Source: Mantamonas sphyraenae STR306 (Eukaryota > Protista > CRuMs). From it: a DNA stretch of 64,000 nt. Below are positions 1 to 18,106 of the stretch, piece by piece. The stretch is taken from the NCBI GenBank assembly GCA_026936335.1, contig JAPMXV010000074.1:158408-222407 (forward strand), in the 5' to 3' direction. The translations under genes and the position numbers were made by a program. How positions within the stretch are numbered: the stretch's first letter is position 1; the number at the start of each line of letters is the position of its first letter. The notes beneath the pieces were generated by a model. It saw only the letters and a program-made list of their open reading frames with translations. It did not search any database and was not told the DNA's origin.

Positions 1-3000
1 TTTCCATGACTTGCCCAGCCGCCGTTCCATGCTTCCGACACGCTCCTCCATGTCTTTCATCCTCGTTTGCAGTTCCATCAGTGCATCGTTGTCATCCAGC
101 ACACGTCCATACAGCAGCGCTTGTGTATGCAGGTTGACTTTGTGCACCCTGCATGACCCGCACTTCTCCTTCTTCACCTCTGCCAACTCATGCACATCCA
201 CACGCAGCCCATGCATCCCCCAGTCCATCCGCAACACCTCATCCACCTCTCCACTTGCCAAACACCGGTGACAGAGCGGATAGCACCTCAGTCCACTGCC
301 CAGTCCATCACACAGCCCACTCTCCTCGGCCACACTCCGCACAAGGGCCTCCACTTTGCCCATCGTCTCCACCGCATCAGCCCATCCATCACTCGCCACC
401 ACAACGTCCACATACCGTGTGTGTGGCTCATGCACAGCCACAATGTGCGGTGCATCCCTGGGCCACACGTGCATCCAGTTCACATGCACCTGCTCTGGCT
501 CCTCCACCCCGTCTGGGAATGCCTCAATCAGCCGCACTTGCACCAGATTGAAGAGAGCAGGAGGCAGCATGTGCCACTTCTCTGCCTGCCATGCCTCATC
601 CTGCTCCTGCTCCTGCTCCTCCTCCCCATCATCTCCTTCCCCTCCCTCCACCACCCACACAAACCGCCGTCCAATCCGACACCCGTTCCCTGCCATCCAC
701 TCCCCGGGCAGCTCCATCTCCACCGTCCGCAGAAACGGAAACACAAGTGTGTCTGTTCCCACACGTGCACACATCTCCACCTCACACAGCAGCTCCAGAA
801 GCACATCCGCCACCCCATCCTCACCACCATCTCCTCCTCCTTCCCACAGCTCCCCATGCAGCCTCCCCACCTGCTTCCGCAATCCATCATCCCATTGCAC
901 GAGCCCGTGATGCTTCCCCTCCGCAATCTGCTTCCCTTTGTCCAACCCCTGAACCTCTGCACCACTCACAAACCCACCCATCAGCTTCGCCAGCCACACA
1001 GGGTCCACCACAACCACCCCTGCCCCTCTGTGCCACACCACCTCCTGCATGTGATGCAGTTCTTCCAGCGATGAATGAAAGATCCGCCCGCGCCTGCTCG
1101 GAAAGTGCTCCCGGATCTCCTCATTCCCCTTCACCATCGCCTCTAGTTCCTCCTCACGCATCCACGGCTGCTCCATCCCACCACTCTCCCGCAGTCCTTG
1201 CACGAACCTCTGCAGTTCCACCGTCCCGCGTGGCACCATCCTGTCCTCTGCCAGTGCCACACTCGCTTCCTCCAGACTGCCCAACAGCCCATCCACGTTG
1301 CCCTTCCACACATCCCCATCCACAACAAACACTCCCTTCTCCCTGTCCATCCGCAGCTGCTCGTACCTCTTGCTCTCCTTCCACCCTTCCACCCACCCTT
1401 GCACCATCCCACGTGCATCCTCCCGATCCATCCTCTCCCCCACCTTCACCTTCTCTCCCAGATCTGCATGCGTCAGCACAAACCACATCTGCGGTTTCTT
1501 CTTCCCTGCCACCTTGGATGCCACCTTGCTCGCCACCATGTCCAGCCACACCTCCAGCTCCCCACGCGCCGCCTCCATGTCCAACCTGTGCCCACCTGCC
1601 ACTGCATCCCACGCCACCATCGATGCCACCAGCACAAACACCCCGCCCTGGCCCATCAACAGGTACTGGTGGCCCACCCAGTACTCTGCCTGTCCGCCAT
1701 AGTCACTAATACGCACACGCACATCCCCATCCCTCAGATCAAACTCATACACATCCATGCTGTGTGTCGCATCCGTCGTCCTCTCCTCCTTGTCCAGTTT
1801 CTGCTTCCGTCTCCTCCGTCTGAAAACCACTCGCCTCCTCTCCTTCCACGAGCTATTCCGCTTCATCGTGTCAATCAACGTCGTCTTGCCCTGTCCACCA
1901 TGTCCCAGCACCATCCAGTTGACCCATTCCCATGCCGTGTCCATCCGTCGCAGATACTCTACCACCGCCTTCCCTCCCTTCTTCACCACAAACCCAGGCA
2001 CATCATCCAACGCCTCGTCATGCTCCAGTCGGAGCCACTGAAGCTCTTTCAAGCTGGCCATTGTCTGCCTGGGCAACACGCTAATGCCTGATCTGCGCAG
2101 ATCCAGGACACGCAGCTCCACGCACAGGCCAATCTCCTCAGGCAGTTCTGTCACACCACTGTCACTCCCAGCAACCAGACACAGCGCCTGAGCTTGGATG
2201 CAACGATCAGAGGAAAGCTCAGCAGCCAACTGCTGCGATGTGGAGAATGACACAAGGCCATCCCGCTCAGCCCAGGCACCCAGCATGGCCAGATGTGTCG
2301 ACGAGTGCCTGCTTGCTGCGATGTCGAGTGGGGATTCTCCATTCATGTTTCTGACAGTGGCATCTGCACCACGAGCGATGAGAAGCGTCGCCGTCTCTGT
2401 GTGTCCGCTGTGTGCTGCTAGGTGCAACGGTGTCCGTCCGTCCCCATCCGTCTTGTCCACCTCTGCTCCCTTGTCCAGCAGAGATGCCGCCGTCTCAGTG
2501 TGCCCGTTTGATACTGCAATGTACAACGGGGTCCATCCGACCCCATCCGTCTTGTTCACCTCAGCTCCCCTGTCCAGCAGCATCGTCGAAGTCTCTGTGT
2601 ACCCGTTCTGTGCTGCTCTGTGCAACGGTGTCCGTCCATCCCCATCCGTCTTGTCCACCTCTGCTCCCCTTTCCAGCAGCATTGACGCCGTCTCTGTGCG
2701 CCCGTTCTGTGCTGCTTTGTGCAACGGTGTCCGTCCGTACACATCCGTCTTGTCCTCTGCTCCCCTTTCCAGCAGCATTGACGCCGTCTCTGTGTGTCCG
2801 TTGTGTGCTGCAATGTGCAACGGTGTCCGTCCGTACACATCCGTCTTGTCCACCTCTGCTCCACTGTCCAGCAGCATTGTAACTATCCCCAGGGGACCCT
2901 TGAATACTGCAAAGTGCAAAGGTGTCGACCCGTCCCTCTCCGTCTTGTCCACCTCTGCTCCCCTGTCCAGCAGCAGCTTCGCCGCGTTGGTTTTCCCCTC

Positions 3001-3132
3001 CCACACCGCGTGGTGCAACGCTGTCCACCGATCCTCATCCTGTTCGTTCACATCTGCACCCCCATCAATCAAATTCTCCATTGCACTCATATCCTCCCTC
3101 CTCACTGCTCTCATCAGCTCTGTGTCCCTCAT
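1..3132 (-). CDS. Roco protein copy A: ankyrin repeats (7 full + caps), short LRR, Roc GTPase, COR; 3' end lies beyond the window start
   Basis: ATG at 3132 (MRDTELMRAV...). The frame stays open to base 1, so it is missing from the ORF track (no stop in the window). P-loop LGHGGQGKTT near 1880-1910. Colinear with 5780-9682. Confidence 0.9.
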   Translation of the reverse strand, partial: MRDTELMRAVRREDMSAMENLIDGGADVNEQDEDRWTALHHAVWEGKTNAAKLLLDRGAEVDKTERDGSTPLHFAVFKGPLGIVTMLLDSGAEVDKTDVYGRTPLHIAAHNGHTETASMLLERGAEDKTDVYGRTPLHKAAQNGRTETASMLLERGAEVDKTDGDGRTPLHRAAQNGYTETSTMLLDRGAEVNKTDGVGWTPLYIAVSNGHTETAASLLDKGAEVDKTDGDGRTPLHLAAHSGHTETATLLIARGADATVRNMNGESPLDIAASRHSSTHLAMLGAWAERDGLVSFSTSQQLAAELSSDRCIQAQALCLVAGSDSGVTELPEEIGLCVELRVLDLRRSGISVLPRQTMASLKELQWLRLEHDEALDDVPGFVVKKGGKAVVEYLRRMDTAWEWVNWMVLGHGGQGKTTLIDTMKRNSSWKERRRVVFRRRRRKQKLDKEERTTDATHSMDVYEFDLRDGDVRVRISDYGGQAEYWVGHQYLLMGQGGVFVLVASMVAWDAVAGGHRLDMEAARGELEVWLDMVASKVASKVAGKKKPQMWFVLTHADLGEKVKVGERMDREDARGMVQGWVEGWKESKRYEQLRMDREKGVFVVDGDVWKGNVDGLLGSLEEASVALAEDRMVPRGTVELQRFVQGLRESGGMEQPWMREEELEAMVKGNEEIREHFPSRRGRIFHSSLEELHHMQEVVWHRGAGVVVVDPVWLAKLMGGFVSGAEVQGLDKGKQIAEGKHHGLVQWDDGLRKQVGRLHGELWEGGGDGGEDGVADVLLELLCEVEMCARVGTDTLVFPFLRTVEMELPGEWMAGNGCRIGRRFVWVVEGGEGDDGEEEQEQEQDEAWQAEKWHMLPPALFNLVQVRLIEAFPDGVEEPEQVHVNWMHVWPRDAPHIVAVHEPHTRYVDVVVASDGWADAVETMGKVEALVRSVAEESGLCDGLGSGLRCYPLCHRCLASGEVDEVLRMDWGMHGLRVDVHELAEVKKEKCGSCRVHKVNLHTQALLYGRVLDDNDALMELQTRMKDMEERVGSMERRLGKSWK
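2325..3132 (-). repeat. 99-bp ankyrin-coding tandem repeat array, copy A
   Basis: Recurring cttgtccacctctgctcccct(g/t)tccagcagcat...gtctctgtgt...caacggtgtcc unit, encoding G(R/W)TPLHxAAxxGHTETAxMLLxRGAEVDK. Confidence 0.9.
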
Positions 3133-4115
3133 TCTTTCTCGCTTGCTGCCCCCGACGTCAGCAGTCCAATTTCTCTCCCCAACGCCCACACTCACACTCA
3201 CCCTCTCCTCCCCACCATCACATTGCACATTCTTCCCACTCACCTTCCACAATCCAATTGCCCCTCCCTGCGCACCTTGCATCCATTCCCCTCCTCTCTG
3301 TTCCTCCGTCTCCTCCCACTCCCAATCACCCCATTGCCACCCAAACCCCACCAGCCCCTTCCCTCTTTCGTTGTTCACTCCTTCCCGTTCTGCTTCTCCT
3401 ACCCCGGCCGTGTCTCCATTTCAAGCTACACCCACCCAGCAACTGCCAGCATCCCCCTCACAGCCTTCCTGACTGACATTGGATTCCCACACACTAAACC
3501 ACGCTATTTCATCTTGAAAAACCCTTCATCCACCCCTGCGGATGTCACGAGTCAACGGCGAAGTGTGTTTCGATCTGCTCCGATCTGGCAATGTTGATCA
3601 ACATCCCACCCAACCTCATCTGCCTCATGACCTGCCCCAACGTGCTTCCACTGCCATCATAATCACCCAGTGTGTCCACCTCGCCGGACAAGCACACAAA
3701 CGGAAGCAGCAGTGAACATGGAGCAGCACCTGCCACTGCCTCGATCCCAAACAGCTCCACCATGCACTTGCTGCACATTCAGTTGAGAGCCACAATCTCA
3801 CCTTTGCACACAATCCTCACATCACACCGTACCACTGCCCCAGCCGTCCCTCACATGTCAGCACACACGATCCCTCTTCCCACCCTCACCCCCACACCCA
3901 CCCCACCCATCTCCCCCATCCCCCCACCCAACCCCCCCAATCAACTCCATGCCAAACCAACACACTCTCCACACCTCAAGCGCGTGGATCAATCTCAAAC
4001 TACGGCAGAAAGTGGGGGGCAATCTTTGTTCTTGCTCTCTCCCTCGGTCTCTCTCTCTCTGCCCACACTGGATACAAGCAGCAGCAGCAGCTTCACAGCT
4101 TCACAGCTGTTCCAC

Positions 4116-4601
4116 TTACTCCTCCCACTCATCAACAGAGTCCTCCTCCTCCTCATCGGAGCTGGAGCCCTCAGAGTAGTCATCCACATCCTCAATGTCC
4201 GACTGCAGCAGACGCGGGCTGAACACAGCTGCCGTGGCCACGGGCATACCGCCACCGTACTGAGTGCGGAACGTACCGTCGGCCTTCTGGTGCGGCCACA
4301 CGCCAGCCTTCTCCATTGTGTAGCGCACGTTGCGGAACTTCTCGCGGAAGTTGTAGTACGCCTGGCCCACCTTGGTCTGCGAGAACTTCTTGCCAAACTC
4401 AGCACCCAGCTTCTGGCGCAGCGCCGTCTTGGCCTTGTCACCGTACTTCATCACCTGCTTCTTCAGGAAGTCGCGGGCGTCAAAGTTCTCCTTGGCCACA
4501 ATCTTGTTGACCGAGTTCATCACCTCACCGTACTTCTGCGAGATCATCTGGAAGGTCTTGCTCTTGGACAGCGACTCACGGATGCGGCCCAGCACACCGT
4601 T
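4116..4601 (-). pseudogene. 5'-truncated duplicate of the last exon of the secreted cationic protein gene (10659-12239)
   Basis: Translates NGVLGRIRESLSK...DEWEE*, near-identical to 10659-11144. It lacks the signal peptide and the upstream exons. Confidence 0.8.
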
Positions 4602-4650
4602 GGTCACACAGTCGACGGTGGTGGACCTGAGGGCATTCTGTGGGCTTTTG

Positions 4651-5130
4651 TCACCCCTTGAGGAGGGTCAAACGGGCAGTGACCCACACGTTGCTGTCCA
4701 TGGTGAGATCCTTCTGATTGTGTGGTACGCCACCAAACATGTACAGCGAGTCCTTGGCCAGGGCCATGGCGTGGCCGTCGCGTGAACCAGGCTGAAGCAA
4801 CGAGTGCGACGGCAGCTGTTGCACATCCACCACCAGCGGGTCGGTGCTCGACGACGACACACTTCCACTGCTGCTTCCTCTGCTGGTGCTGGTGGTGGTG
4901 CTGTGGAAGCGTCGGAATGTCGACGGTGACGACGGTGACGACGGTTGGAGGCGAAAGGAAGAGGCACGGGCTGACGAGGGCGAGCCCAGGCCAGGCGAAC
5001 GGTAGGAAGAGGCACGTGGGGAGGCAGGCGAGGCTGAACGTGAGCTTGGTGATCGGCGTATACTGGGACTGGAGGGTGTGGATGACGATGATGATGCCAG
5101 CCACGACCAGTTGGAGGACGACGATGACAT
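4651..5130 (-). pseudogene. Fragment of a kelch-repeat gene (Ser-rich N-terminus plus one kelch blade)
   Basis: MSSSSSNWSW...PGSRDGHAMALAKDSLYMFGG is a typical kelch blade. The ORF stops after one blade, next to the duplication breakpoint. Confidence 0.5.
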
Positions 5131-5473
5131 CCTCGCTGGGTTTTGGTTGGCAGCGCGGGTGGTGTGCCTGTTGTGGGCGGCAGTGCACAATGGTGTCCAC
5201 TGCCTTGCTTGGTTGTGTCCACGTGTGTGTGTGTGTGTGTGACTGTGTGCAGCAGCATCGACAGTGAGTCTGTGTGGCCATGGAGTGTGCTCCTGTCCGG
5301 AGGAGTGATGGGGTGTTGGTGTGTGACACCATTACACAATGCAGCAATCAACCGGCATGTGGCTTTGTTGTTGGGTGTTCGCCCTGTCCACTCCTCTGTC
5401 CAATGGTCCAGCAGCATCGTAGCCCAACTTATCTTCATTCTCCCATCCCTGCACACACATCCTCCAACACTCT

Positions 5474-8400
5474 TCACACCCCTTCATCATCTTCATCTTC
5501 ATCCTCCTCCTCTGCCACTTCTCCGGATTCCTCCGTCCCTGCTCTCTCCCCTCGCAGCTCTTCCAGATGCAGCTGCAGATCCACAACCACCACACGCAGT
5601 TCTTCCAACTCCTTGCCAGATGACGACGATGACCCCATCCCGTCCATCTCCTCCAGCGTCTGTGCCACCATCGATCGCACTGCGTCCATGTCTGCTGTGC
5701 CCCCGGCCCTGTGCTTCACCTGCAGCTCTGTCACCCAGCCAAGCAGCTGTGGATACTGCTTTGCCACTTTCTTGATCGCTTTCCATGACTTGCCCAGCCG
5801 CCGTTCCATGCTCCCAACACGCTCCTCCATGTCTTTCATCCTTGTTTGCAGTTCCATCAGTGCATCTTTGTCATCCAACACACGTCCATACAGCAGCGCC
5901 TGTGTATGCAGGTTGACTTTGTGCACCCTGCATGAACCACACTTCTCTTTCTCCACCTCTGCCAACTCCTGCACATCCACACGCAGCCCGTGCATCCCCC
6001 AGTCCATCCGCAGCACCTCATCCACCTCTCCACTTGCCAAACACCGGTGACAGAGCGGATAGCACCTCAGTCCACTGCCCAGTCCATCACACAGCCCACT
6101 CTCCTCGGCCACACTCCGCACAAGGGCCTCCAATTTGCCCATCGTCTCCACCACATCCGCCCATCCAGCACTCGCCACCACAACGTCCACATACCGTGTG
6201 TGTGGCTCATGCACAGCCACAATGTGCGGTGCATCCACAGGCCACACGTGCATCCAGTTCACATGCACCTGCTCGGGCTCCTCCACCCCGTCTGGGAATG
6301 CTTCAATCAGTCGCACCTGCACCAGATTGAAGAGAGCAGGAGGCAGCATGTGCCACTTCTCTGCCTGCCATGCCTCGTCCTGCTCCTCCTGCTCCTCATT
6401 CCCTTCCTGATCAGTCACCACCCACACAAACCGCCGTCCAATCCGACACCCGTTCTCTGCCATCCACTCCCCGGGCAGTTCCATCTTCACCGTCCGCAGA
6501 AATGGAAACACAAGCGTATCTGTCCCCACACGTGCACACATCTCCACCTCACACAGCAGCTCCAGCAGCACATCCGCCACCCCATCCTCACTCGTACATC
6601 CCCACAGCCCCCCATGCAACCTCCCCACCTGCTTCCTCAATCCATCATCCCACTGCACCAGCCCATGGTGTTTCCCCTCCCCAATCTGCTTCCCTTTGTT
6701 CAGCCCTTGCACATGTTCTCCGCTCACAAACCCTCCCATCAGCTTCGCCAGCCACACAGGATCAAGTACAACCACCCCTGCTCCCCTGTGCCACACCACC
6801 TCTTGCATGTGGTGCAGTTCCTCCAGCGATGAATGAAAGATCCGCCCTGAACTGCTCGGAAAGTGCTCTTTCGTCACCCAATACCTCTTGACCAGTTGCA
6901 TCAGCCTCTCATCCCGAATCCAAGGTTTGGCAAGCATGCTACTCTCCCGCAGTCCCTGCACATACTTCTGCAGCTCCACCGTCCCGCGTGGCACCATCCT
7001 CTCCTCTGCCAGTGCCACACTCGCATCCTCCAAACTGCCCAACAACCCATCCACGTTGTCCTTCCACACATCCCCATCTACCACAAACACTCCCTTCTCT
7101 GCATCCATCCGCAGCTGCTCGTACCTCTTGCTCTCCTTCCACCCTTCCACCCACCCTTTCAACATCCCACATGCATCCTCCCGATCCATCCTCTCCCCCA
7201 CCTTCACCTTCTCTCCCAGATCTGCATGTGTCACCACAAACCACATCTGCGGCTTCTTCTTCCCTGCCACCTTGGGTGCCACCTTGCTCGCCACCATGTC
7301 CAGCCACACCTCCAGCTCCCCACGTGCTGCCTCCATGTCCACCCTGTGTCCACCTTCCACTGCATCCCACGCCACCATCGATGCCACCAGCACAAACACC
7401 CCGCCCTGGCCCATCAACAGGTACTGGTGGCCCACCCAGTACTCTGCCTGTCCACCATAGTCACTGATACGCACACGCACATCTCCACCCTTCAGATCAA
7501 ACTCATACACATCCATGCTGTGTGTCGCATCCGTCGTCCTCTCCTCCTTGTCCAGCTTGAGTTTGGCTGTGCGCCACCTGAAGAACACCTTGCCCCACTC
7601 TTCCCACGAGCTATTCCGCTTCATCGTGTCAATCAGTGTCGTTTTGCCCTGTCCACCATGTCCCAGCACCATCCAGTTCACCCACTCCCACGCAGTATCC
7701 ATCCGTGCCAGATATTCCACCACCGCCTTCCCTCCTTTCTTCACCACAAACCCAGGCACATCATCCAACGCCTCATCATGCTCCAGCAACAAGTGCTCCA
7801 ACTTCCCGAGATTCTCCATTGCCTGCCTGGGCAACACGCTGATGCCCGATCTGCGCAGATCCAGGACACGCAGCTCCACACACATGCCAATCTCTTCAGG
7901 AAGCTCTGACACATCGCTTTCACTCTCAGCAACCAAACACAGCGCCTGAGGTTGGATACAACGAGCAGACGACAGCTCAGCAGCCAACTGCTGCGATGTG
8001 GAGAACGACACAAGGCCATCGCGCTCAGCCCAGGCACCCAGCATGGCCAAATGTGTCGACGGGTGCCTGGTTGCTGCGATGTTGAGTGCAGACCCTCCAA
8101 ACGGGGTTGTGACAGTGACATCTGCACCACGAGCGATGAGAAGCGTCACCGTCTCTGTCTGTCCGTTCGCTACCGCAATGTGCAACGGTGTCCGTCCGTT
8201 CTCATCCGCCTTGTCCACCTGTGCTCCCCTGTCCAGCAGCATCGTCGCAGTCTCTGTGTACCCTTTCTCTGCTGCAACGTACAAAGGTGTCCGTCCGTTC
8301 TCATCCGCCTTGTCCACCTGTGCTCCCCTGTCCAGCAGCATCATCACCATCTCTGTGTTTCCTTTCTTTGCTGCTGTGTACAACGGTGTCCACCCAATGC

Positions 8401-9682
8401 TGTCCGCCTTGTCCACCTCTGCTCCCCTGTCCAGCAGCATCGTCGCCGTCTCTGTGTACCCTTTCTCTGCTGCAACGTACAACGGTGTCCATCCCTTCCC
8501 CCACGCCTTGTCCACCTCTGCTCCCCCGTCCAGCAGCATCGTCGCCGTCTCTGTGTACCCTTTCTCTGCTGCTTTGTACAACGGTGTCCACGTCCCCCCC
8601 ACCTTTTTCACCTGTGCTCCCCTGTCCAGCAGCATCATCACCGTCTTTGTGTGCCCGTGCTCTGCTGCAATGTACAAAGGTGTCCGTCCGAAATCATCCC
8701 TCTTGTCCACCTCTGCTCCCCTGTCCAGCAGCATCGTCGCCGTCTCGGTGTGCCCGTGCTGTGCTGCTTTGTACAACGGTGTCCACCCGTTCATATTCGC
8801 CTTGTCCACATCTGCTCCCCTGTTCAGCAGCATCGTCGCCGTCTCTGTGTGCCCGTTCTCTGCTGCGATGTACAACGGTGTCCTCCCGTTCTCATCAATC
8901 TTGTCCAACGCTGTTCCCCTTTCCAGCAGCACTGTCACCGTCTCTGTGTGCCCCTCCTGTGCTGCCATGTGCAACGGTGTCCTCCCGTCCTTCTCCACCT
9001 CGTCCATCTCTGCTCCCCTGTCCAGCAGCATCATCACAGTCTCTGTGTGTCCGTACCATGCTGCAATGTGCAACGGTGTCCACCCGTCCGTCCCCGCCTT
9101 GTCCACATCTGCACCCCTGTCCAGCAGCATCGCCGCAGTCTCCGTGTGCCCGTTCGATGCTGCACTGAATAGAGGTGTCCGTCCGTCCCTATCCATCTTG
9201 TCCACCTCTGCTCCCCTGTTCAGCAGCATCGTCGCCGTCTCTGTGTGCCCTTCCTGAGCTGCAATGTGTAACGGTATGGCTCCGTACTTCGTCGGCATGT
9301 CCACTTCTGCTCCCCTGTCCAGCAGCATCATCACCGACTCTGTGTGCCCGTTCTGTGCTGCCATGTACAACGGTGTCCTCCCGCTCCTCTCCGCCTTGTC
9401 CAACGCTGTTCCTCTTTCCAGCAGCATCGTCACTATCCCCGTGTGACCCTTCAATGCTGCAAAGTGCAACGGTGTCCTCCCGTTCCTCTCCGTCTTGTCC
9501 ACCTCTGTTCCCCTGTCCAGCAGCAACTTTGCCGCGTTTGTTTTCCCCTCCCACCCCGCGTGGTGCAACGCTGTCCACCCATCCTCATCCTGTTCGTTCA
9601 CATCTGCACCCCCATCAATCAACTCCTCCATTACACGATTATCACCCCACCTCACTGCTTTCATCAGCTCTGCGTCGCTCAT
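5474..9682 (-). CDS. Roco protein copy B: ankyrin repeats (15 full + caps), short LRR, Roc GTPase, COR, Cys motifs, coiled coil; no kinase domain
   Basis: First ATG at 9682 (MSDAELMKAV). LRR-like ELPEEIGMCVELRVLDLRRSGISVLP. G1 GHGGQGKTT, G3 DYGGQAEY, G4 VTHAD. COR-like VVVLDPVWL and LPPALFNLVQVRL. CHRC...CGSC motifs and an acidic tail. Confidence 0.92.
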   Translation of the reverse strand: MSDAELMKAVRWGDNRVMEELIDGGADVNEQDEDGWTALHHAGWEGKTNAAKLLLDRGTEVDKTERNGRTPLHFAALKGHTGIVTMLLERGTALDKAERSGRTPLYMAAQNGHTESVMMLLDRGAEVDMPTKYGAIPLHIAAQEGHTETATMLLNRGAEVDKMDRDGRTPLFSAASNGHTETAAMLLDRGADVDKAGTDGWTPLHIAAWYGHTETVMMLLDRGAEMDEVEKDGRTPLHMAAQEGHTETVTVLLERGTALDKIDENGRTPLYIAAENGHTETATMLLNRGADVDKANMNGWTPLYKAAQHGHTETATMLLDRGAEVDKRDDFGRTPLYIAAEHGHTKTVMMLLDRGAQVKKVGGTWTPLYKAAEKGYTETATMLLDGGAEVDKAWGKGWTPLYVAAEKGYTETATMLLDRGAEVDKADSIGWTPLYTAAKKGNTEMVMMLLDRGAQVDKADENGRTPLYVAAEKGYTETATMLLDRGAQVDKADENGRTPLHIAVANGQTETVTLLIARGADVTVTTPFGGSALNIAATRHPSTHLAMLGAWAERDGLVSFSTSQQLAAELSSARCIQPQALCLVAESESDVSELPEEIGMCVELRVLDLRRSGISVLPRQAMENLGKLEHLLLEHDEALDDVPGFVVKKGGKAVVEYLARMDTAWEWVNWMVLGHGGQGKTTLIDTMKRNSSWEEWGKVFFRWRTAKLKLDKEERTTDATHSMDVYEFDLKGGDVRVRISDYGGQAEYWVGHQYLLMGQGGVFVLVASMVAWDAVEGGHRVDMEAARGELEVWLDMVASKVAPKVAGKKKPQMWFVVTHADLGEKVKVGERMDREDACGMLKGWVEGWKESKRYEQLRMDAEKGVFVVDGDVWKDNVDGLLGSLEDASVALAEERMVPRGTVELQKYVQGLRESSMLAKPWIRDERLMQLVKRYWVTKEHFPSSSGRIFHSSLEELHHMQEVVWHRGAGVVVLDPVWLAKLMGGFVSGEHVQGLNKGKQIGEGKHHGLVQWDDGLRKQVGRLHGGLWGCTSEDGVADVLLELLCEVEMCARVGTDTLVFPFLRTVKMELPGEWMAENGCRIGRRFVWVVTDQEGNEEQEEQDEAWQAEKWHMLPPALFNLVQVRLIEAFPDGVEEPEQVHVNWMHVWPVDAPHIVAVHEPHTRYVDVVVASAGWADVVETMGKLEALVRSVAEESGLCDGLGSGLRCYPLCHRCLASGEVDEVLRMDWGMHGLRVDVQELAEVEKEKCGSCRVHKVNLHTQALLYGRVLDDKDALMELQTRMKDMEERVGSMERRLGKSWKAIKKVAKQYPQLLGWVTELQVKHRAGGTADMDAVRSMVAQTLEEMDGMGSSSSSGKELEELRVVVVDLQLHLEELRGERAGTEESGEVAEEEDEDEDDEGV
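8085..9682 (-). repeat. 99-bp ankyrin-coding tandem repeat array, copy B
   Basis: 15 full ~33-aa units with a nucleotide-level conserved scaffold. Confidence 0.92.
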
Positions 9683-10658
9683 CCTCCAGTTCTGCCCCAC
9701 ACGTCAGCCCCTCCAATCTCCCTCCCCAACGCCCACTCTCACACCCTCTCCCCCTCACCAACACATTCCACATTCTTCCCACTCACCTTCCACAATCCAA
9801 TTGTCCCTCCCTGCGCACCTTGCATCCATTCCCCTCCTCTCTGCTCCTCCGTTGCCTCCCACTCCCAATCACCCCATTGCCATCCAACCCCCACCCACCA
9901 GCCCCTTCCTTCTCTCATTCTTCACTCCTTCCCATTCTGCTTCCCCTACCCCCGCCGTGTCTCCATCGCAACAGCCACCCGCACCGGCAACTGCCAGCAT
10001 CCCTCACAGCCTTCGTCATTGACATCGGGCACCCACGCAAGAAACCAAGCAATAACGTCTTGCAACACGCTTCATCCACCCCTGGCGATGTCACGTGTCA
10101 ACGGCGACGTGTTTCGATCTGCTCAGAGCTGGCAATGTTGATCAACATTTCCAAACACCCCCATCAGCCTCATGACCTGCCACAACGTGCTGCCACTGCC
10201 ATCATACTCAACCAGTGTGTCCACCTCGCCGGACAAGCACACAAACTGATACAGCAATGCAACGGGGAACAGGGACAGCAGCGGCCACTGCCGCGACCCC
10301 AACACCTCCACCATGCACTTGATGCACATTCAGTCAAGTGCCACAATCTCACCTTTGCACACAATCCTCTCATCACACCGTACCACTGCCCCAGCCGTCC
10401 CTCCCATCTCAGCACACACAATCCCTATTCCCACCCTCACCACCCCACCCATCTCCCCAACCCCCCAACCCCCCCACCATATCAACTCCATGCCAACCCA
10501 ACACACTCTCCACACCTCACGCGCGTGAATCAATCTCAAACCACGGCAGAAAGCAGGGGGCAATCTTTGTTCTTGCTCTCTCCCTCGGTCTCTCTCTCTC
10601 TCTGACCATACTGGATACAAGCAGCAGCAGCAGCTTCACAGCTTCACAGCTGATCCAC

Positions 10659-12239
10659 TTACTCCTCCCACTCATCAGCAGAGTCCTCCTCCTCCTCATC
10701 GGAGCTGGAGCCCTCAGAGTAGTCATCCACATCCTCAATGTCCGACTGCAGCAGACGCGGGCTGAACCCAGCTGCCGTGGCCACGGGCATACCGCCACCG
10801 TACTGAGTGCGGAACGTACCGTCGGCCTTCTGGTGCGGCCACACGCCAGCCTTCTCCATTGTGTAGCGCACGTTGCGGAACTTCTCGCGGAAGTTGTAGT
10901 ACGCCTGGCCCACCTTGGTCTGCGAGAACTTCTTGCCAAACTCAGCACCCAGCTTCTGGCGCAGCGCCGTCTTGGCCTTGTCACCGTACTTCATCACCTG
11001 CTTCTTCAGGAAGTCGCGGGCGTCAAAGTTCTCCTTGGCCACAATCTTGTTGACCGAGTTCATCACCTCACCGTACTTCTGCGAGATCATCTGGAAGGTC
11101 TTGCTCTTGGACAGCGACTCACGGATGCGGCCCAGCACACCGTTCTTCAGAGAGTCGAACTTGTACTTGAGGGCGCCGGTGATCTTGCCCTTGATGTTGT
11201 TGAACGTGGAGATACCCTTGTTCAGCAGCTGGCCAACCTTGCCGCGGAGCAGGTTCTGGCCGGCCTTGAACTTGCCGATGGCACCCTTGATGAAGCCGAA
11301 CACGTTGCCGCTCTTCACCTTGTCGTACACAGCCTTGGCCTTGCGCACAAAGCCGATGGCAGTCTTGACAAACGGGCTGCTGGCGATCTTGCCAAAGATG
11401 GACGAGCCCTTGATGGCGCCCATCACAACACCACCGATGCCCGTGAAGGACAGAGCAGTGGTCACGATGCCAAACAGCGGCGAGTTCATCACCTTCTTGG
11501 CCACCTGTACAAGACGAGAACAGCACGCCACAGTGTGCACATGGTGTGTTAGCGCCGCAAACACGCAAACGTGTGCTGGACCCCTTTTTTTTTCCCTCGC
11601 ATCCACATGCTCGTTTTCCCCGCCACACACAACTTACCGAGATGACCTTGCCGGCGACACGGCCGATGCCACGAGCGACACGGCCCACGAAGCGACCAAC
11701 ACGGCGGAACGCACTGCAGAGGGCACACAGCGAGGTGGGGCGTCAGCAACAACGGCGGAAAAGGGGTGCGGCGAAAGAGGGCCAAAGAAAAAAACCGAGC
11801 CGAAAGAAAAACCACGGCGCACGTTTGGGGCTGGCACAGACGTGTGGCTGCCCTGCCACACTCTGGCATGCAAGGGCTGTCTAGACAGGGATGCAACCTA
11901 CCGTCCAATGCGGCGGAAGAACTGATCGTTGTCCTCCACATCGTCCGAGTCGTCGTTGTCGCTGCGCTCCTCTTCCTCCGACTGCTCCTCGGCCTCGCTG
12001 GCCTCGGAGAGGTTGTCGTCGGTAAAGTCGGCGTCAGCCTTGGTCTCGTCCATCAGACCGGTGTCCCAGTCCGACTCGTCCGAAGAGTCCTGTGTGGGTG
12101 GTGATGGAGAAAACGAGGCGTGTGTGTGTGAGTGAGAGCGGCCCTTCAGATTCCGCACCCTCCCGTTGTCACAACGTACGACGGCAGCCAGGGCAGCGCC
12201 AAGAATGCAGAGAATCACAAACGCAAACTTCAACTGCAT
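10659..12239 (-). CDS. Secreted prepro-protein, ~389 aa: signal peptide, acidic pro-region, cationic amphipathic Gly/Lys/Arg-rich domain, acidic tail. Exons 12239-12180, 12089-11902, 11713-11638, 11504-10659
   Basis: Signal peptide MQLKFAFVILCILGAALAAV. Three GT-AG introns (GTACGT, GTAGGT, GTAAGT) splice in consistent phase to give ...DVEDNDQFFRRIGRAFRRVGRFVGRVARGIGRVAGKVISVAKKVMNSPLFG... Confidence 0.85.
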
Positions 12240-12362
12240 GTTGAGGAAAGGGGGGGGTTGTTTTTTTGGGGGGTTTTGTGTGCTTGCGCCAGGGCATCCA
12301 CACAAGCACTCCACAAGAGGGATCCGAAAGCATACCGGGGTGGGGGAATCCTTGCTTGGATC

Positions 12363-13556
12363 ATGTCACGTGCAGGAAAAGGGGCAGGACGTGTGATTGT
12401 GGCGATGTCGGGAGGAGTGGATTCGTCGTTGGTGGCCAAGCTGATGGTGGAGAAGTACGGGCGGGAGGCAGTGCGAGGGTTGTACATGCGCAATTGGGAA
12501 GAAGACGAGGCAGACGTGTGTCCAGCAGATGCGGATTGGGAGGATGTGCAGCAAGTGTGTGGGCAGCTGGGGATCGAAGCACATCACGTCAACTTTGTGC
12601 AAGAGTACTGGACACACGTGTTTGCCGACTTTCTGGAAGGCCTGCAAGCAGGCATGACGCCAAACCCGGACGTGTGGTGCAACCAACACATCAAGTTCAA
12701 ACACATGCTTGCTCACGCGACGCAGACGCTGGGAGGCGACGTCCTTGCCACAGGACACTACGTACGCACAGAGCGAGACACAGAGACGGGAATCACGCGG
12801 CTACTGAGTGGTGTGGACCCAGGCAAGGACCAGGCGTACTTTCTGTCGCTAGTGCAAGGCCAAGCGCTTGGGTCGGTGGAATTTCCGCTGGGGGCCATGC
12901 ACAAGACGGCCGTGAAGCAGATGGCGGCAGAGTCTGGACTAGCAACGGCCCACAAGCGAGAGAGCATGGGCATTTGCTTTGTGGGCAAGCGCAACTTTGG
13001 TGCGTTTGTGCAAGAGTACATCCCGGTGACGCCCGGACCGTTTGTGGACCTGGAAACTGGCCGGGAACTGGGCCAACACAAGGGCCTGGCCCTGTATACG
13101 CTGGGCCAACGTGCAGGCATCTCTGGCATCAGCACCAAAATGTATGTGTGTGGCAAGGATGCAGAGCAGAACGTGCTGTACGTGGTCGACGAACGCGATC
13201 ACCCGGCTTTGTACAGCGACCGCCTCGTGCTTGCCGATCTGCATTGGATCAACGACCACGACCCGTTGCTCGACATGAGTGGCGACGGAGCAGCTGGTGA
13301 GACCGGTGAGGATGGTGGGGTGCACTCGCAGTCTCCACCCGCGCGTCATCATCCTCGTCGTCGTCGTCTGCACTTGCTTGGTGAGACACGGTACCATGAA
13401 CCAAAGGTGCCTCTGGTGTTGGACACACACAGCAAACAGGTGTTTTTGGAACAGCCTCAGCGTGCAGTGACCCCCGGTCAGTTTCTATGTTTGTACAGCG
13501 CCCAGCGGCCCGAGGTGTGTCTCGGAGCAGGGCAAATCGCAGAAACGATCATGTAA
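12363..13556 (+). CDS. TRMU: tRNA-specific 2-thiouridylase MnmA/TRMU (mitochondrial type)
   Basis: Motifs AMSGGVDSS, TPNPDVWCN, ATGHY, KDQAYFL, ESMGICFVG, YTLGQRAG, PQRAVTPGQ. Confidence 0.95.
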   Translation: MSRAGKGAGRVIVAMSGGVDSSLVAKLMVEKYGREAVRGLYMRNWEEDEADVCPADADWEDVQQVCGQLGIEAHHVNFVQEYWTHVFADFLEGLQAGMTPNPDVWCNQHIKFKHMLAHATQTLGGDVLATGHYVRTERDTETGITRLLSGVDPGKDQAYFLSLVQGQALGSVEFPLGAMHKTAVKQMAAESGLATAHKRESMGICFVGKRNFGAFVQEYIPVTPGPFVDLETGRELGQHKGLALYTLGQRAGISGISTKMYVCGKDAEQNVLYVVDERDHPALYSDRLVLADLHWINDHDPLLDMSGDGAAGETGEDGGVHSQSPPARHHPRRRRLHLLGETRYHEPKVPLVLDTHSKQVFLEQPQRAVTPGQFLCLYSAQRPEVCLGAGQIAETIM

Positions 13557-13699
13557 AGTACAGGTGGAAAGGGTGTGTGGTGGCACCGAGTGGCAAAGAC
13601 GTGTGATTCACTCGCACGCCGAACAGAGTGCCCAAGACCCCCGTTGACGTCCATCAATCACCCCACCACCTTCACCACTACCCAATGAAACCATTTCCA

Positions 13700-14479
13700 T
13701 TAGCACTGTTTGGTGCTGACGTCCCCCACGCCCTTGTAGGCCTTGAGATCGGCAATGATTTTCTTGACGCGCTCCTCGTTCACGCCAAAGTCGCCTCGAC
13801 CAAGCCTGGACTGGCTCTGGACCCACAGCTTCTGGCAGCCGATGGCCACGTAGACATCGTCGGGATAGCCCATGACCTGAGTCAGGATCCTGGCATGCAC
13901 AAAATCCTTGCGGTTTGTGATGAGCTCGGCCGTCGAGGGCAGGTTGGAGAGGATGGACACCACGGCGTCGTGCACCTTGTCGACGGTGGCGTTAAACACA
14001 GGTGGAGACAGGCCCTGGCCACGCATGGGATTGGTGGGTGCCACACGTGTGCAGTCGTAGGGCGCTTCCGCCTTGCGCAGACATTCCGAGGGAAAGCTGG
14101 TGACGCCTGCAGGGTCCGGTGCCAACAGGGGCACCAGGAAGAGAAGGGTGGTGAAGAGGAACATCACAATGGACAATGTGACCAGGCCACACGCTGCCTT
14201 GTCGTGTGTCTGTGTCTTGGACCAGCGACGCGTGGCCAGCAGCAGCATCGTCGTGGCAATCAGACTTCCTGCAGCCCATCCAATGCCAAACCAGTGCTCC
14301 CATTGGCTGGCCACCACCAACAACCCCACAGACACAATCACCTTGAGTGCCAATGTGACCAGAAGCACACGCTGCCTTCCGGTGCGCCGGGAAAAGAAGT
14401 TGCCATCACGATCGGCGTCGGCAAACAAGTCGGTGGCGCTGTCGCCATGCAATCCACGGTATGGTGCCCCTTTGCTCAT
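13700..14479 (-). CDS. Membrane protein with C-terminal DUF1499-like domain
   Basis: About three hydrophobic helices, then GYPDDV...VQSQSRLGRGDFGVNEERVKKI, which matches the DUF1499 pattern from memory. Confidence 0.75.
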   Translation of the reverse strand: MSKGAPYRGLHGDSATDLFADADRDGNFFSRRTGRQRVLLVTLALKVIVSVGLLVVASQWEHWFGIGWAAGSLIATTMLLLATRRWSKTQTHDKAACGLVTLSIVMFLFTTLLFLVPLLAPDPAGVTSFPSECLRKAEAPYDCTRVAPTNPMRGQGLSPPVFNATVDKVHDAVVSILSNLPSTAELITNRKDFVHARILTQVMGYPDDVYVAIGCQKLWVQSQSRLGRGDFGVNEERVKKIIADLKAYKGVGDVSTKQC

Positions 14480-14565
14480 TCTTCTCGAATCCTATCCACA
14501 ACTCACACAACACCACACAAGTTGCACCGGCGAGCGCTTGGCCAGCAAACGCAAGTGAGAGAGAG

Positions 14566-17500: not shown

Positions 17501-18106
17501 AAGGAAATCGATCTGCCCGAGGATTCGCTGTACAAGCTGGCCACCTACTTGGCACGCCACACGCTCAACGCACTGGGCGAGACCTTTGTGGGTGCACGCG
17601 ACATCATGGCCTTTCTCAAGCAGTGCGCACAGGTCATTTCCAAGGATGGTCAGCCTGTGAGCTGGTTGACCCCGCTGGGCCTGCCTGTGGTCCAGCCGTA
17701 CCGTCGTGTGGCCTCGTATCGGGTGCGCACCCTTGTGCAGAACGTGATCATTGCCGATCACAACGAGGCGTTGCCCGTGAGTGTCACCAAGCAGAAGAGC
17801 GCCTTTCCGCCCAACTACGTCCACAGTCTGGACAGCACACACATGCTCATGACTGCGCTGGGCATGGAGAAGCACGGCCTGACCTTTGCCAGCGTCCACG
17901 ACTCCTTCTGGTCCCACGCCGGTTCCATCGACCAGATGAACATCCTCCTGCGTGAGGCCTTTATCGAATTGCACTCGCAGCCCCTCCTCCACGACCTGCT
18001 GGAGTCGTTCAAACAGCGCTACCCGCACCTGGAGTTCCCAGACCTGCCCGAGGTGGGTGATCTGGACATCGAAGCCGTGCGTGATGCGCCCTATTTCTTT
18101 GATTGA
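14566..18106 (+). CDS. POLRMT: Mitochondrial single-subunit (T3/T7 phage-type) RNA polymerase; intron 14681-14777
   Basis: Motifs DFRGRAY, PVHQDGSCNGLQHY, RKIVKQTVMTSVYG, SVHDSFW and C-terminal YFFD. Exon 1 (MFTRTRSLAQTGRRTIRPSLL...) is presequence-like and joins in phase through GTAGGA...GCTGAC...CGCAG. Confidence 0.95.

What the first reader, a model, noticed from the sequence alone, without database searches (positions are those of the whole stretch)
1..9682. Tandem Roco GTPases with shuffling, DARPin-like variable ankyrin arrays: candidate protist immune/sensor receptor family
Seen: two intact ANK-LRR-Roc-COR paralogs carry 7 and 15 full 99-bp repeats. The scaffold GHTETATMLLDRGAEVDK is conserved down to the DNA, within and between genes. 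Variation concentrates in the beta-hairpin (ERN, TKY, DRD, GTD, NMN, DDF, WGK, DSI, DVY, DGV), the R/W before TPL, the residue after TPL(H/Y), and the AAxx pair (LK, QN, QE, SN, WY, QH, EK, KK). Non-adjacent units share private motifs (LLERGTALDK appears twice, five units apart), and two adjacent units end identically (GAQVDKADENG). Known: these are largely the concave-surface positions randomised in DARPins. Internally homogenised, number-variable repeats drive specificity changes in fungal NLRs, and brown algal Roco LRRs are shuffled. Inference: recombination between repeats generates new binding specificities on a GTPase switch (kinase-less in the complete copy).
Basis: partly seen in the sequence, partly recalled or inferred. 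Interest (0 to 1): 0.82.

Follow-up and report, generated by a model that had tools for sequence, protein, structure and literature searches.

The report
Fast-evolving ankyrin arrays on ROCO GTPases
Two neighbouring genes of the protist Mantamonas join an ankyrin-repeat binding surface of very different length (15 versus 7 repeats) to an LRRK2-type GTPase switch. The predicted ligand-contact positions change faster than silent sites, as in fast-diversifying receptor families, but no function has been tested.

Summary
Window 5474-9682(-) is a complete 1402-codon gene. Window 1-3132(-) is its paralogue: it runs off the window but is intact in the contig. A third copy lies just upstream. All three are intronless.

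Layout: ankyrin array, about 3 LRRs, Roc GTPase, COR, Cys-rich knuckle, coiled coil, acidic tail. There is no kinase. Pfam misses Roc and COR, but a family profile hits LRRK2 (E=4e-14) and the AlphaFold model matches LRRK1, LRRK2 and C. tepidum Roco (E down to 1e-21).

Variation sits at repeat positions 33/1/2/3/5/9/10/13/14, where nucleotide identity is about 58% against about 87% in the scaffold. A likelihood test gives omega 3.6-3.9 at these sites in the window's arrays (p=0.0007-0.003). Per codon, only hairpin position 2 is significant alone. Paralogue cores are gene-conversion mosaics (68-100% identity per 180 nt). The shuffling signal between units is modest.

The family has at least 12 members, some with other sensor or effector domains. 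ANK-only gene clusters use the same unit.

This scan already noted a similar array elsewhere in this genome (s1-596485, s1-596414).

An immune role is plausible but untested. I class it as a new variant of a known kind.

The parts
5474..9682 (-). Gene A: complete intronless CDS, 1402 codons plus stop. ANK-LRR-Roc-COR-coiled coil, no kinase.
   Evidence: Single open frame. Pfam finds ANK at E=1e-129 and a weak LRR. Profile and fold match LRRK1, LRRK2 and CtRoco.
9590..9682 (-). N-terminal capping helix pair of the ankyrin solenoid.
   Evidence: AF2 model m50c79e47747f has helices 3-12 and 15-23 at pLDDT above 85. The same cap heads the ANK-only genes on C51 and C67.
8012..9592 (-). Ankyrin array of gene A: 16 units of 33 codons (15 full plus a degenerate C-cap). 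Unit 11 lacks one codon.
   Evidence: AF2 predicts a continuous solenoid of 17 helix pairs with mean pLDDT 88.
7739..7951 (-). Short LRR segment, about 3 repeats, just before Roc (approximate limits).
   Evidence: Pfam LRR_14/LRR_8 give weak hits. PDB LRR proteins and LRRK2 residues 1254 onward match. The model shows beta strands here.
7049..7687 (-). Roc GTPase (approximate limits). P-loop GHGGQGKT at 7640-7663, switch II DYGGQ, G4-like THAD.
   Evidence: These motifs are invariant across 11 paralogues. The profile aligns collinearly with LRRK2 residues 1254-1610, E=4e-14. Foldseek finds Roco and Ras-like folds.
5879..7048 (-). COR domain, followed by a Cys-rich knuckle (CxxC ... C) (approximate limits).
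   Evidence: Foldseek: C. tepidum COR (3dpt_B, TM-score by the target 0.70), LRR-Roc-COR (6hlu_A, E=1e-17), LRRK1 and LRRK2. C664, C667 and C704 are invariant.
5477..5878 (-). C-terminal long helices (coiled-coil-like) and an acidic tail. No recognisable effector domain.
   Evidence: The AF2 model has helices 724-838 here at low confidence. Pfam gives only a sub-threshold Dynamitin hit. PADLOC finds nothing and NCBIfam only weak LRR/GTPase matches in the N-terminal part.
1..3132 (-). Gene B: paralogue of A, cut by the window start. It is intact in the contig, and its core is 90% identical to A at protein level.
   Evidence: Core dN 0.063, dS 0.242 against A.
2254..3042 (-). Ankyrin array of gene B: 8 units (7 full plus the C-cap). 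Unit 3 lacks one codon.
   Evidence: B1 and B2 are orthologous to A1 and A2 (94% and 84% nt). B7 and B8 are orthologous to A15 and A16 (86% and 85%). The inner units show no positional orthology.
3133..5473 (.). Spacer of the tandem duplication unit. It carries a truncated passenger copy (4119-4667, minus strand) of the gene at 10659-11630.
   Evidence: The spacers between the three tandem genes are 90-95% identical. The passenger ORF is 97% identical over 165 residues.

Best explanation
The window holds two of three tandem copies of a family of kinase-less ROCO proteins that I found only in this genome. The genome is almost certainly Mantamonas sphyraenae.

Shown:
- Each protein is an ankyrin solenoid of variable length, a short LRR, a Roc GTPase with intact P-loop, switch II and G4 motifs, a COR domain, a small Cys-rich element and a coiled-coil tail.
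- The array changes length through gain and loss of whole 99-bp units in its middle, while the capping units stay in place.
- Family members, including ones on different contigs, have exchanged segments by gene conversion.
- The core is under purifying selection.
- The hairpin and inner-helix positions of the repeats have diverged 2 to 4.5 times faster than silent sites.

Inferred:
- The ankyrin groove is a ligand-binding surface under diversifying or at least unconstrained evolution.
- It holds or releases the Roc-COR switch on binding, as the N-terminal repeats do in LRRK2-type proteins.
- Output goes through COR or coiled-coil oligomerisation. In other family members it goes through a CHAT protease.
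- The most likely biological role is recognition of variable non-self or prey-derived proteins. This is an analogy, not a result.
For: Architecture:
- Pfam ANK.
- Profile A1 against LRRK2 residues 1254-1610, E=4e-14.
- Foldseek of the AF2 core model (pLDDT 70.5): LRRK1 2.6e-21, LRRK2 1.8e-19, CtRoco LRR-Roc-COR 1.2e-17, COR domain TM-score by the target 0.70.
- G motifs invariant in 11 paralogues.

Family:
- At least 12 close paralogues plus fragments.
- Sensor swaps to RNI-type LRR arrays on the same core.
- A CHAT domain in a distant member.

Evolution:
- Entropy peaks at contact positions.
- Within A, dN at the variable sites is 0.70, against scaffold dS of 0.16-0.32.
- ML omega is 3.6-3.9 at variable sites and 0.5-0.6 in the scaffold. 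Omega=1 is rejected at p=0.0007-0.003 for A+B.
- Control: 175 units of ANK-only genes of the same genome give omega of about 1.0 at the same sites.
- Core dN/dS is 0.25-0.37, and identity in 60-codon windows swings between 68% and 100%.
- End units are orthologous while the middle is not.
Against: - Per codon, only position 2 is significant (p=0.0009). Position 0 is borderline, and 3, 10 and 14 fit neutrality.
- With all six genes and the six pre-chosen sites, omega is 1.6 and not significant.
- Pairwise counting inside the variable codons gives only 1.2-2.4.
- Recombination, which is present, inflates such likelihood tests. The tree rests on 99 nt.
- Concentration of variation at these positions is a general property of ankyrin repeats.
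- There are no recent exchange tracts (57 nt at most).
- No data exist on expression, ligands, strains or GTPase activity.
- No recognisable effector domain in A or B.
Confidence: 0.6

Rival explanations
1. These are ordinary ROCO scaffold or signalling paralogues. The variable positions are simply the unconstrained surface residues of any ankyrin repeat. The arrays drift in length by replication slippage or unequal exchange, with no adaptive diversification and no receptor role.
For: - The same positions are the variable ones in all ankyrin repeats. The arrays match ankyrin-R/B and DARPins equally well.
- Most variable codons individually fit omega of 1 to 2.5.
- ANK-only genes with the same unit show omega of about 1.
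- All-gene omega at the pre-chosen sites is 1.6, not significant.
- A and B carry no effector domain.
Against: - In the window's arrays omega=1 is rejected for the pre-chosen site set (p=0.003).
- dN at variable sites exceeds silent divergence 2 to 4.5-fold.
- Position 2 is significant after correction for 24 tests.
- Tandem clustering, sensor and effector swapping, gene-conversion mosaics and pseudogene fragments are unusual for housekeeping signalling genes.
Confidence: 0.25
2. This is a recognition family, but not for defence. The arrays would bind variable endogenous or conspecific targets (mating or allorecognition) or prey surface or effector proteins during phagotrophy.
For: It shares the diversification signals of the main explanation. 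Fungal ANK, WD and TPR NLRs with the same evolutionary regime act in allorecognition (PMC4986451). Mantamonas is described among free-living heterotrophic flagellates (PMC10492846).
Against: Nothing here separates this from the immune reading. The proteins have no signal peptide or membrane segment in the N-terminal cap, so they would act inside the cell.
Confidence: 0.1
3. This is a decaying or selfishly amplified segmental duplication. The copies are young duplicates on their way to pseudogenes, and the pattern reflects relaxed selection after duplication.
For: - A tandem unit of gene plus a 2.3-kb spacer with a truncated passenger gene.
- Family fragments and one copy with an in-frame stop (L011, L013, L015, L026).
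- A frameshift inside the C3 array.
Against: A, B and C keep open frames of 1113-1409 codons. Core dN/dS is 0.25-0.37 at dS of 0.24-0.40, and all GTPase motifs are invariant.
Confidence: 0.05

Closest known systems
LRRK1 / LRRK2 (animal ROCO kinases)
   Same: The domain order ANK-LRR-Roc-COR is the same. The profile aligns collinearly with LRRK2 residues 1254-1610. These are the best fold matches, at E of 1e-19 to 1e-21. The G4 motif is T-H-x-D rather than N-K-x-D; from my own memory, LRRK2 has this too.
   Different: No kinase, WD40 or ARM domain. The ankyrin array is longer and varies in number. The family is multi-copy and mosaic. Sequence identity is only about 15%.
Kinase-less LRR-Roc-COR proteins (Chlorobium tepidum Roco, MASL1-type)
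   Same: LRR-Roc-COR without a kinase. The fold match to 6hlu_A has E=1.2e-17 and TM-scores of 0.49 (by the query) and 0.47 (by the target).
   Different: Here the LRR is reduced to about 3 repeats and a long ankyrin array is the large N-terminal repeat domain. A Cys-rich knuckle and a coiled coil follow COR.
Brown-algal LRR-ROCO candidate immune receptors (PMC3341825, PMC11378527)
   Same: A kinase-less ROCO family, expanded within one lineage. Repeat number varies, and there are signs of diversifying selection on the concave face of the repeats.
   Different: In the algae the variable module is the LRR, with one exon per repeat shuffled as exons and alternatively spliced. Here it is an intronless ankyrin array altered by unit gain and loss and by gene conversion.
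Fungal NLRs with highly conserved ANK, TPR or WD repeats (Podospora; PMC4986451)
   Same: 33-residue ANK units, variable repeat number, and variable or positively selected sites in the hairpin and inner helix. Sensor and effector domains are swapped combinatorially within the family.
   Different: The switch is Roc-COR, not NACHT or NB-ARC. The repeat array is N-terminal to the switch rather than at the C-terminal end. The window's arrays do not reach the 85% internal identity criterion (63-64% residues).
DARPins (designed consensus ankyrin libraries)
   Same: A consensus-like scaffold. The variable positions include those randomised in DARPins (2, 3, 5, 13, 14, 33; from my own memory). PDB DARPins are among the best sequence matches.
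   Different: These are natural proteins. Positions 1, 9 and 10 and parts of helix 2 also vary. The arrays are much longer and are joined to a GTPase.

Membership tests
ROCO proteins | Roc: a Ras-like GTPase domain with G1, G3 and G4 motifs | tested here: met
   GHGGQGKT, DYGGQ and THAD are invariant in 11 paralogues. The profile hits LRRK2 across Roc at E=4e-14. Foldseek finds Roco and Ras folds. Note that the Pfam Roc model PF08477 does not hit at E<0.01.
ROCO proteins | A COR domain directly after Roc (the Roc-COR tandem) | tested here: met
   The profile alignment runs into LRRK2 COR-A, residues 1511-1610. Fold matches: 3dpt_B COR (TM-score by the target 0.70), 3dpu_A RocCOR, 6hlu_A. Pfam COR-A does not hit. 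The model has medium confidence (pLDDT 70.5).
ROCO proteins | GTP binding and hydrolysis, and nucleotide-dependent dimerisation | not testable with these tools
   This needs purified protein.
Ankyrin repeat proteins | Tandem 33-residue helix-turn-helix-hairpin units forming a solenoid | tested here: met
   Pfam Ank at E=1.5e-129 with 14-15 stretches. AF2 predicts 17 helix pairs at pLDDT 88.
Fungal-NLR-type highly conserved (HiC) repeat arrays | At least 85% identity between repeats over at least 100 residues (PMC4986451) | tested here: not met
   Mean residue identity between inner units is 63% in A and 64% in B. Paralogue D on C56 reaches 81%. Mean nucleotide identity is 79%.
Fungal-NLR-type highly conserved (HiC) repeat arrays | Repeat-number polymorphism between strains | not testable with these tools
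   Only one haploid assembly is reachable. Paralogues carry 5 to about 25 units.
Fungal-NLR-type highly conserved (HiC) repeat arrays | Positive selection at binding-face positions | tested here: inconclusive
   As a site class, omega is 3.6-3.9 with p of 0.003 or less in A+B. Per codon, only position 2 is significant. The all-gene test with pre-chosen sites is not significant. Recombination confounds these tests.
NLR / STAND receptors | A central NACHT or NB-ARC STAND NTPase | tested here: not met
   The central module is Roc-COR. Pfam finds no NACHT or NB-ARC.
Brown-algal LRR-ROCO receptors | A variable LRR array with one exon per repeat, shuffled as exons | tested here: not met
   The genes are single open frames with about 3 LRRs. 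The variable array is ANK.
Immune or non-self receptors (functional class) | Ligand-dependent activation and a protective phenotype | not testable with these tools
   There are no expression, ligand or knockout data. PADLOC finds nothing.

The most novel reading that the evidence does not exclude
Mantamonas, a deep-branching relative of animals, fungi and amoebae, would run an intracellular non-self recognition system built on ROCO GTPases instead of STAND NTPases. One conserved Roc-COR core takes interchangeable sensors (ANK arrays, RNI-type LRR arrays) and outputs (coiled coil, CHAT protease). It draws on a genome-wide pool of more than 250 related ANK units, including tandem ANK-only genes that could serve as decoys, adaptors or a conversion reservoir.
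Probability: 0.25. Interest if true: 0.8.

Novelty: new variant of a known kind. Interest (0 to 1): 0.55.

Why it matters
ROCO proteins are best known from LRRK2 and Parkinson's disease, and the role of their N-terminal repeats is still being worked out. A family in which the same Roc-COR core carries fast-evolving ankyrin arrays of 5 to about 25 units would be a natural experiment on how a repeat domain controls the ROCO switch.

It would also add a third, independent case in which eukaryotes build variable intracellular receptors from repeat arrays on an NTPase. The first two are brown-algal LRR-ROCOs and fungal ANK/WD/TPR NLRs. This case uses ANK on a GTPase, in a lineage near the base of Amorphea.

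The consensus-like arrays could also serve as a natural library of stable ankyrin binders. None of this is established until expression, polymorphism and ligands are shown.

Tried and rejected
- The search for homologous proteins on the core (residues 560-1300) returned nothing at E<=1e-3. The exact protein is not in the 15-billion collection.
- The exhaustive profile search returned only LRR-Roc proteins, matched over profile positions up to about 360. No relative of the COR or tail part was listed.
- Two metagenome scans gave no orthologue. The only hit was 32% identical over Roc.
- PADLOC added nothing, and NCBIfam gave only weak LRR and small-GTPase matches.
- A full codon-model tree search timed out, so the codon models were fitted on a fixed nucleotide tree.
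- Background jobs did not survive between calls.
- Donor-cassette idea (ANK-only genes feeding the Roco arrays): the longest exact shared tract is 52 nt and best unit identities are 77-87%. There is therefore no sign of recent transfer into A or B.
- Assembly artefact: rejected, because the units differ by about 20% and the open frames are intact.
- I could not map sites onto model coordinates, since the tools do not give coordinates. Positions were assigned from the model's secondary structure and the standard ANK/DARPin numbering.


Full report
**Source.** The window is C74:158408-222407 of a 25,061,354-base, 78-contig genome. These figures and the GC content of about 59% match the published FALCON assembly of Mantamonas sphyraenae: 25.06 Mb, 78 contigs, GC 59.19%, GCA_026936335.1 (PMC10492846). 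Earlier notes of this scan gave me that name as a lead. The match of the assembly statistics is my own check.

**What is there.**
- Window 5474-9700(-) is one open frame. From its first Met (9682) it encodes 1402 residues.
- Window 1-3132(-) is a paralogue that runs off the window start. In the contig its frame is intact, at 1243 codons between stops.
- A third paralogue, 1113 codons between stops, lies a further 5.7 kb upstream.
- The three genes are head-to-tail. They are separated by 2.3-kb spacers that are 90-95% identical.
- Each spacer carries a truncated copy of the gene at 10659-11630, 97% identical over 165 residues.

**Repeats.**
- TRF reports 99-bp arrays at 8144-9525 (14.0 copies, 79% matches) and 2389-2975 (6.0 copies, 82%).
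- One unit in each gene lacks one codon.
- AlphaFold2 predicts residues 1-560 of A as one uninterrupted solenoid of 17 helix pairs, with mean pLDDT 88.

**Is it a ROCO?**
- Pfam sees ankyrin repeats (E=1e-129) and a weak LRR. It sees no Roc, COR or kinase at E<0.01, so the label had to be tested.
- An alignment of 11 paralogue cores (A1) has invariant GHGGQGKT, DYGGQ and T-H-x-D motifs.
- As a profile it matches LRRK2 in one collinear stretch, residues 1254-1610: the last LRRs, Roc and the start of COR, at E=4e-14.
- The AlphaFold2 model of the core (pLDDT 70.5, pTM 0.69) finds LRRK1 (E=2.6e-21), LRRK2 (1.8e-19), C. tepidum LRR-Roc-COR (1.2e-17) and the isolated COR domain 3dpt_B (TM-score by the target 0.70).
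- The best remote hits in 1.8 billion representatives are LRR-Roc(-COR) proteins by Pfam.
- The Roc-COR tandem, which defines the family (PMC11378527), is therefore present.
- After COR come a small Cys-rich element, long helices and an acidic tail. No effector domain is recognisable.

**The family.**
- The genome holds at least 12 close paralogues on eight contigs, plus fragments and one copy with an in-frame stop.
- Array length ranges from 5 units to about 25. The 25-unit array is on C3, and there it contains a frameshift that may be an assembly error.
- Two members (L009, L012) carry long RNI-type LRR arrays in front of the same core.
- A distant member (L017) ends in a CHAT domain (Pfam E=6.9e-6, above the curated cut-off).
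- This scan had already noted the C3 gene and a CHAT-bearing member (s1-596485, s1-596414).

**Where the variation lies.** I number the unit so that G of G-x-TPL is position 4, which is the DARPin numbering with position 0 equal to 33.
- Entropy is 1.2-2.9 bits at positions 0, 1, 2, 3, 5, 9, 10, 13 and 14. It is mostly below 1 bit elsewhere.
- In the model these positions are the hairpin and loop (0-5) and the first, inner helix (7-14).
- This pattern is the general one for ankyrin repeats, so on its own it proves nothing.

**Rates.**
- Within A, the nine variable codons have dN=0.70 and dS=0.38. Scaffold codons have dS=0.32 in the 5' half of the unit and 0.16 in the 3' half.
- Variable-site replacement divergence is thus 1.9 to 4.5 times the silent divergence, depending on the yardstick.
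- On a fixed nucleotide tree, a two-partition Goldman-Yang model gives the following for the A+B units.
  - For the six DARPin positions chosen in advance: omega 3.9 at those sites and 0.63 at the other codons, with omega=1 rejected at p=0.003.
- With units of all six ANK-rich paralogues:
  - The nine-site class gives omega 2.0. Twice the log-likelihood difference is about 10, but that null also fixed kappa.
  - The six-site class gives omega 1.6 and is not significant (p=0.10).
- A per-codon likelihood scan finds only position 2 significant alone (best omega 15 or more, p=0.0009).
  - Position 0 is borderline (p=0.06).
  - Positions 1, 5, 9 and 13 are best at 2.5 but not significant.
  - Positions 3, 10 and 14 are best at 1.
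  - Scaffold positions 7, 8, 19, 20 and 22 are significantly below 1.
- A useful internal control is the set of 175 units from ANK-only genes of the same genome. They show dN=0.60 at the same sites with dS=0.5-0.7, so omega is about 1.
- The Roco arrays have thus reached the same near-saturated replacement divergence at about half the silent divergence or less.
- All these tests assume one tree and no recombination. Both assumptions are violated here, so I treat the class-level result as suggestive and the position-2 result as the firmest.

**Homogenisation and shuffling.**
- The arrays of A and B are not internally homogenised.
  - Inner units share 79% of nucleotides and 63-64% of residues. 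The criterion used for fungal NLR repeats is 85% (PMC4986451).
  - Units of A are on average closer to units of the C56 paralogue (81%) than to each other (79%). Their best matches in other Roco genes (81-89%) and in ANK-only genes (77-87%) are close to their best matches in their own gene (81-93%).
- A few young duplicates exist: A11/A12/A14 at 91-93% and B3/B4 at 95%.
- The first two and last two units of A and B are positional orthologues (94, 84, 86 and 85%). The inner units show no diagonal at all. The middle of the array has therefore been rebuilt since the genes duplicated.
- The PHI test for mosaic units is modest: p=0.003 for scaffold sites of A+B, 0.02 for A, and not significant for all six genes.
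- The longest exact tract shared at different offsets is 57 nt, so I see no recent event.

**Exchange between genes.**
- The non-repeat cores are clear mosaics. In 60-codon windows:
  - A-C identity runs from 100% (in Roc) to 68%.
  - A-B runs from 75% to 99%.
  - B-D and A-E (different contigs) reach 95% and 93% exactly where A-B drops to 75-77%.
- Overall core dN/dS is 0.25-0.37 at dS 0.24-0.40. That indicates purifying selection, and so functional genes.

**Reading.** I take these genes as fast-evolving binding modules on a conserved GTPase switch, in a family that evolves by birth and death and swaps its domains. That is the evolutionary signature of recognition receptors.
- The mechanism is inferred from LRRK2-type proteins and NLRs and is not shown: ligand binding in the ankyrin groove, release of Roc-COR, then oligomerisation or protease output.
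- The immune role is an analogy.
- The main rival is that the variable sites are merely unconstrained. It cannot be excluded with one genome and short alignments.

**Novelty.**
- ANK-LRR-Roc-COR is the N-terminal half of LRRK1 and LRRK2.
- Kinase-less ROCOs, variable-repeat ROCOs (brown algae; PMC3341825, PMC11378527) and variable ANK arrays on NTPases (fungi; PMC4986451) are all described.
- I found no paper joining Mantamonas to ROCO or ankyrin families among the top-ranked results of a loose search.
- I found no relative of this particular core in the protein or metagenome collections.
- It is a new variant of a known kind.

**Limits.**
- No coordinates of the models were available for surface mapping.
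- Ancestral-state counting was not available and was left out.
- No strain, haplotig, expression or biochemical data could be reached.

Noticed in passing
L034+L035 (G000:C51:207792-222647) and L036+L037 (G000:C67:249183-260020): Two tandem clusters of ANK-only genes (6 and 3 genes, all on the minus strand). They have the same N-terminal cap and the same 33-residue unit type as the Roco genes, but no Roc-COR. By in-register count they hold 5 to 34 units per gene, about 184 units in all. Omega at the contact positions is about 1.
   Followed up: partly
L008+L033 (G000:C3:~341100-347500, minus strand): A family member with about 25 ankyrin units, the most homogenised array seen. A frameshift inside the array splits it into two overlapping frames; this may be real or a long-read error. 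Its C-terminal extension has a His...Cys pattern that Pfam does not call as CHAT.
   Followed up: partly
L009 (G000:C77) and L012 (G000:C34): These have the same LRR-Roc-COR core, but the N-terminus is a long array of 28-residue RNI/NLRC-type LRRs followed by only 2-3 ankyrin repeats. That is a sensor-domain swap within the family.
   Followed up: no
L017 (G000:C68:~140500-143060) and L019, L021-L023 (G000:C68:200-233 kb): A distant branch of the family, 31-38% identical in Roc-COR. One member has a Pfam CHAT domain at its C-terminus. Four tandem genes of 1800-2000 codons have LRRs at the N-terminus.
   Followed up: partly
window 3133-5473, 4119-4667(-), 10659-11630(-): Each tandem unit carries a truncated copy of the neighbouring 323-residue gene of unknown function (basic middle, acidic tail). 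The copy is 97% identical in protein, while the Roco cores are mosaics of 68-100% identity.
   Followed up: partly
window 5474-8041 against paralogues (core codons 330-390 and 600-690): There are sharp switches of nearest paralogue along the core. For example, B matches the C56 gene at 95% where it matches its neighbour A at 75-77%. This points to ectopic gene conversion between contigs.
   Followed up: partly
window 8012-9592, unit positions 17-22: Within gene A the 3' half of the unit has dN about equal to dS (0.15 and 0.16). Helix 2 comes in a few alternative versions (T-E-T-A-T, T-E-T-V-M, T-G-I-V-T) rather than one fixed scaffold.
   Followed up: no
P0001, P0125 (remote hits of the core profile): The best remote relatives are very long LRR-Roc proteins (COR-A weakly detected in P0001, none listed for P0125) ending in a 'GT4-conflict' glycosyltransferase domain. 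These are ROCO architectures of the conflict-system type.
   Followed up: no
window 12132-13553(+), 13628-18103(+): The housekeeping neighbours on the other strand are an MnmA-type tRNA 2-thiouridylase and a single-subunit (phage/mitochondrial-type) RNA polymerase. GC skew flips sign at about 12 kb together with the coding strand.
   Followed up: no
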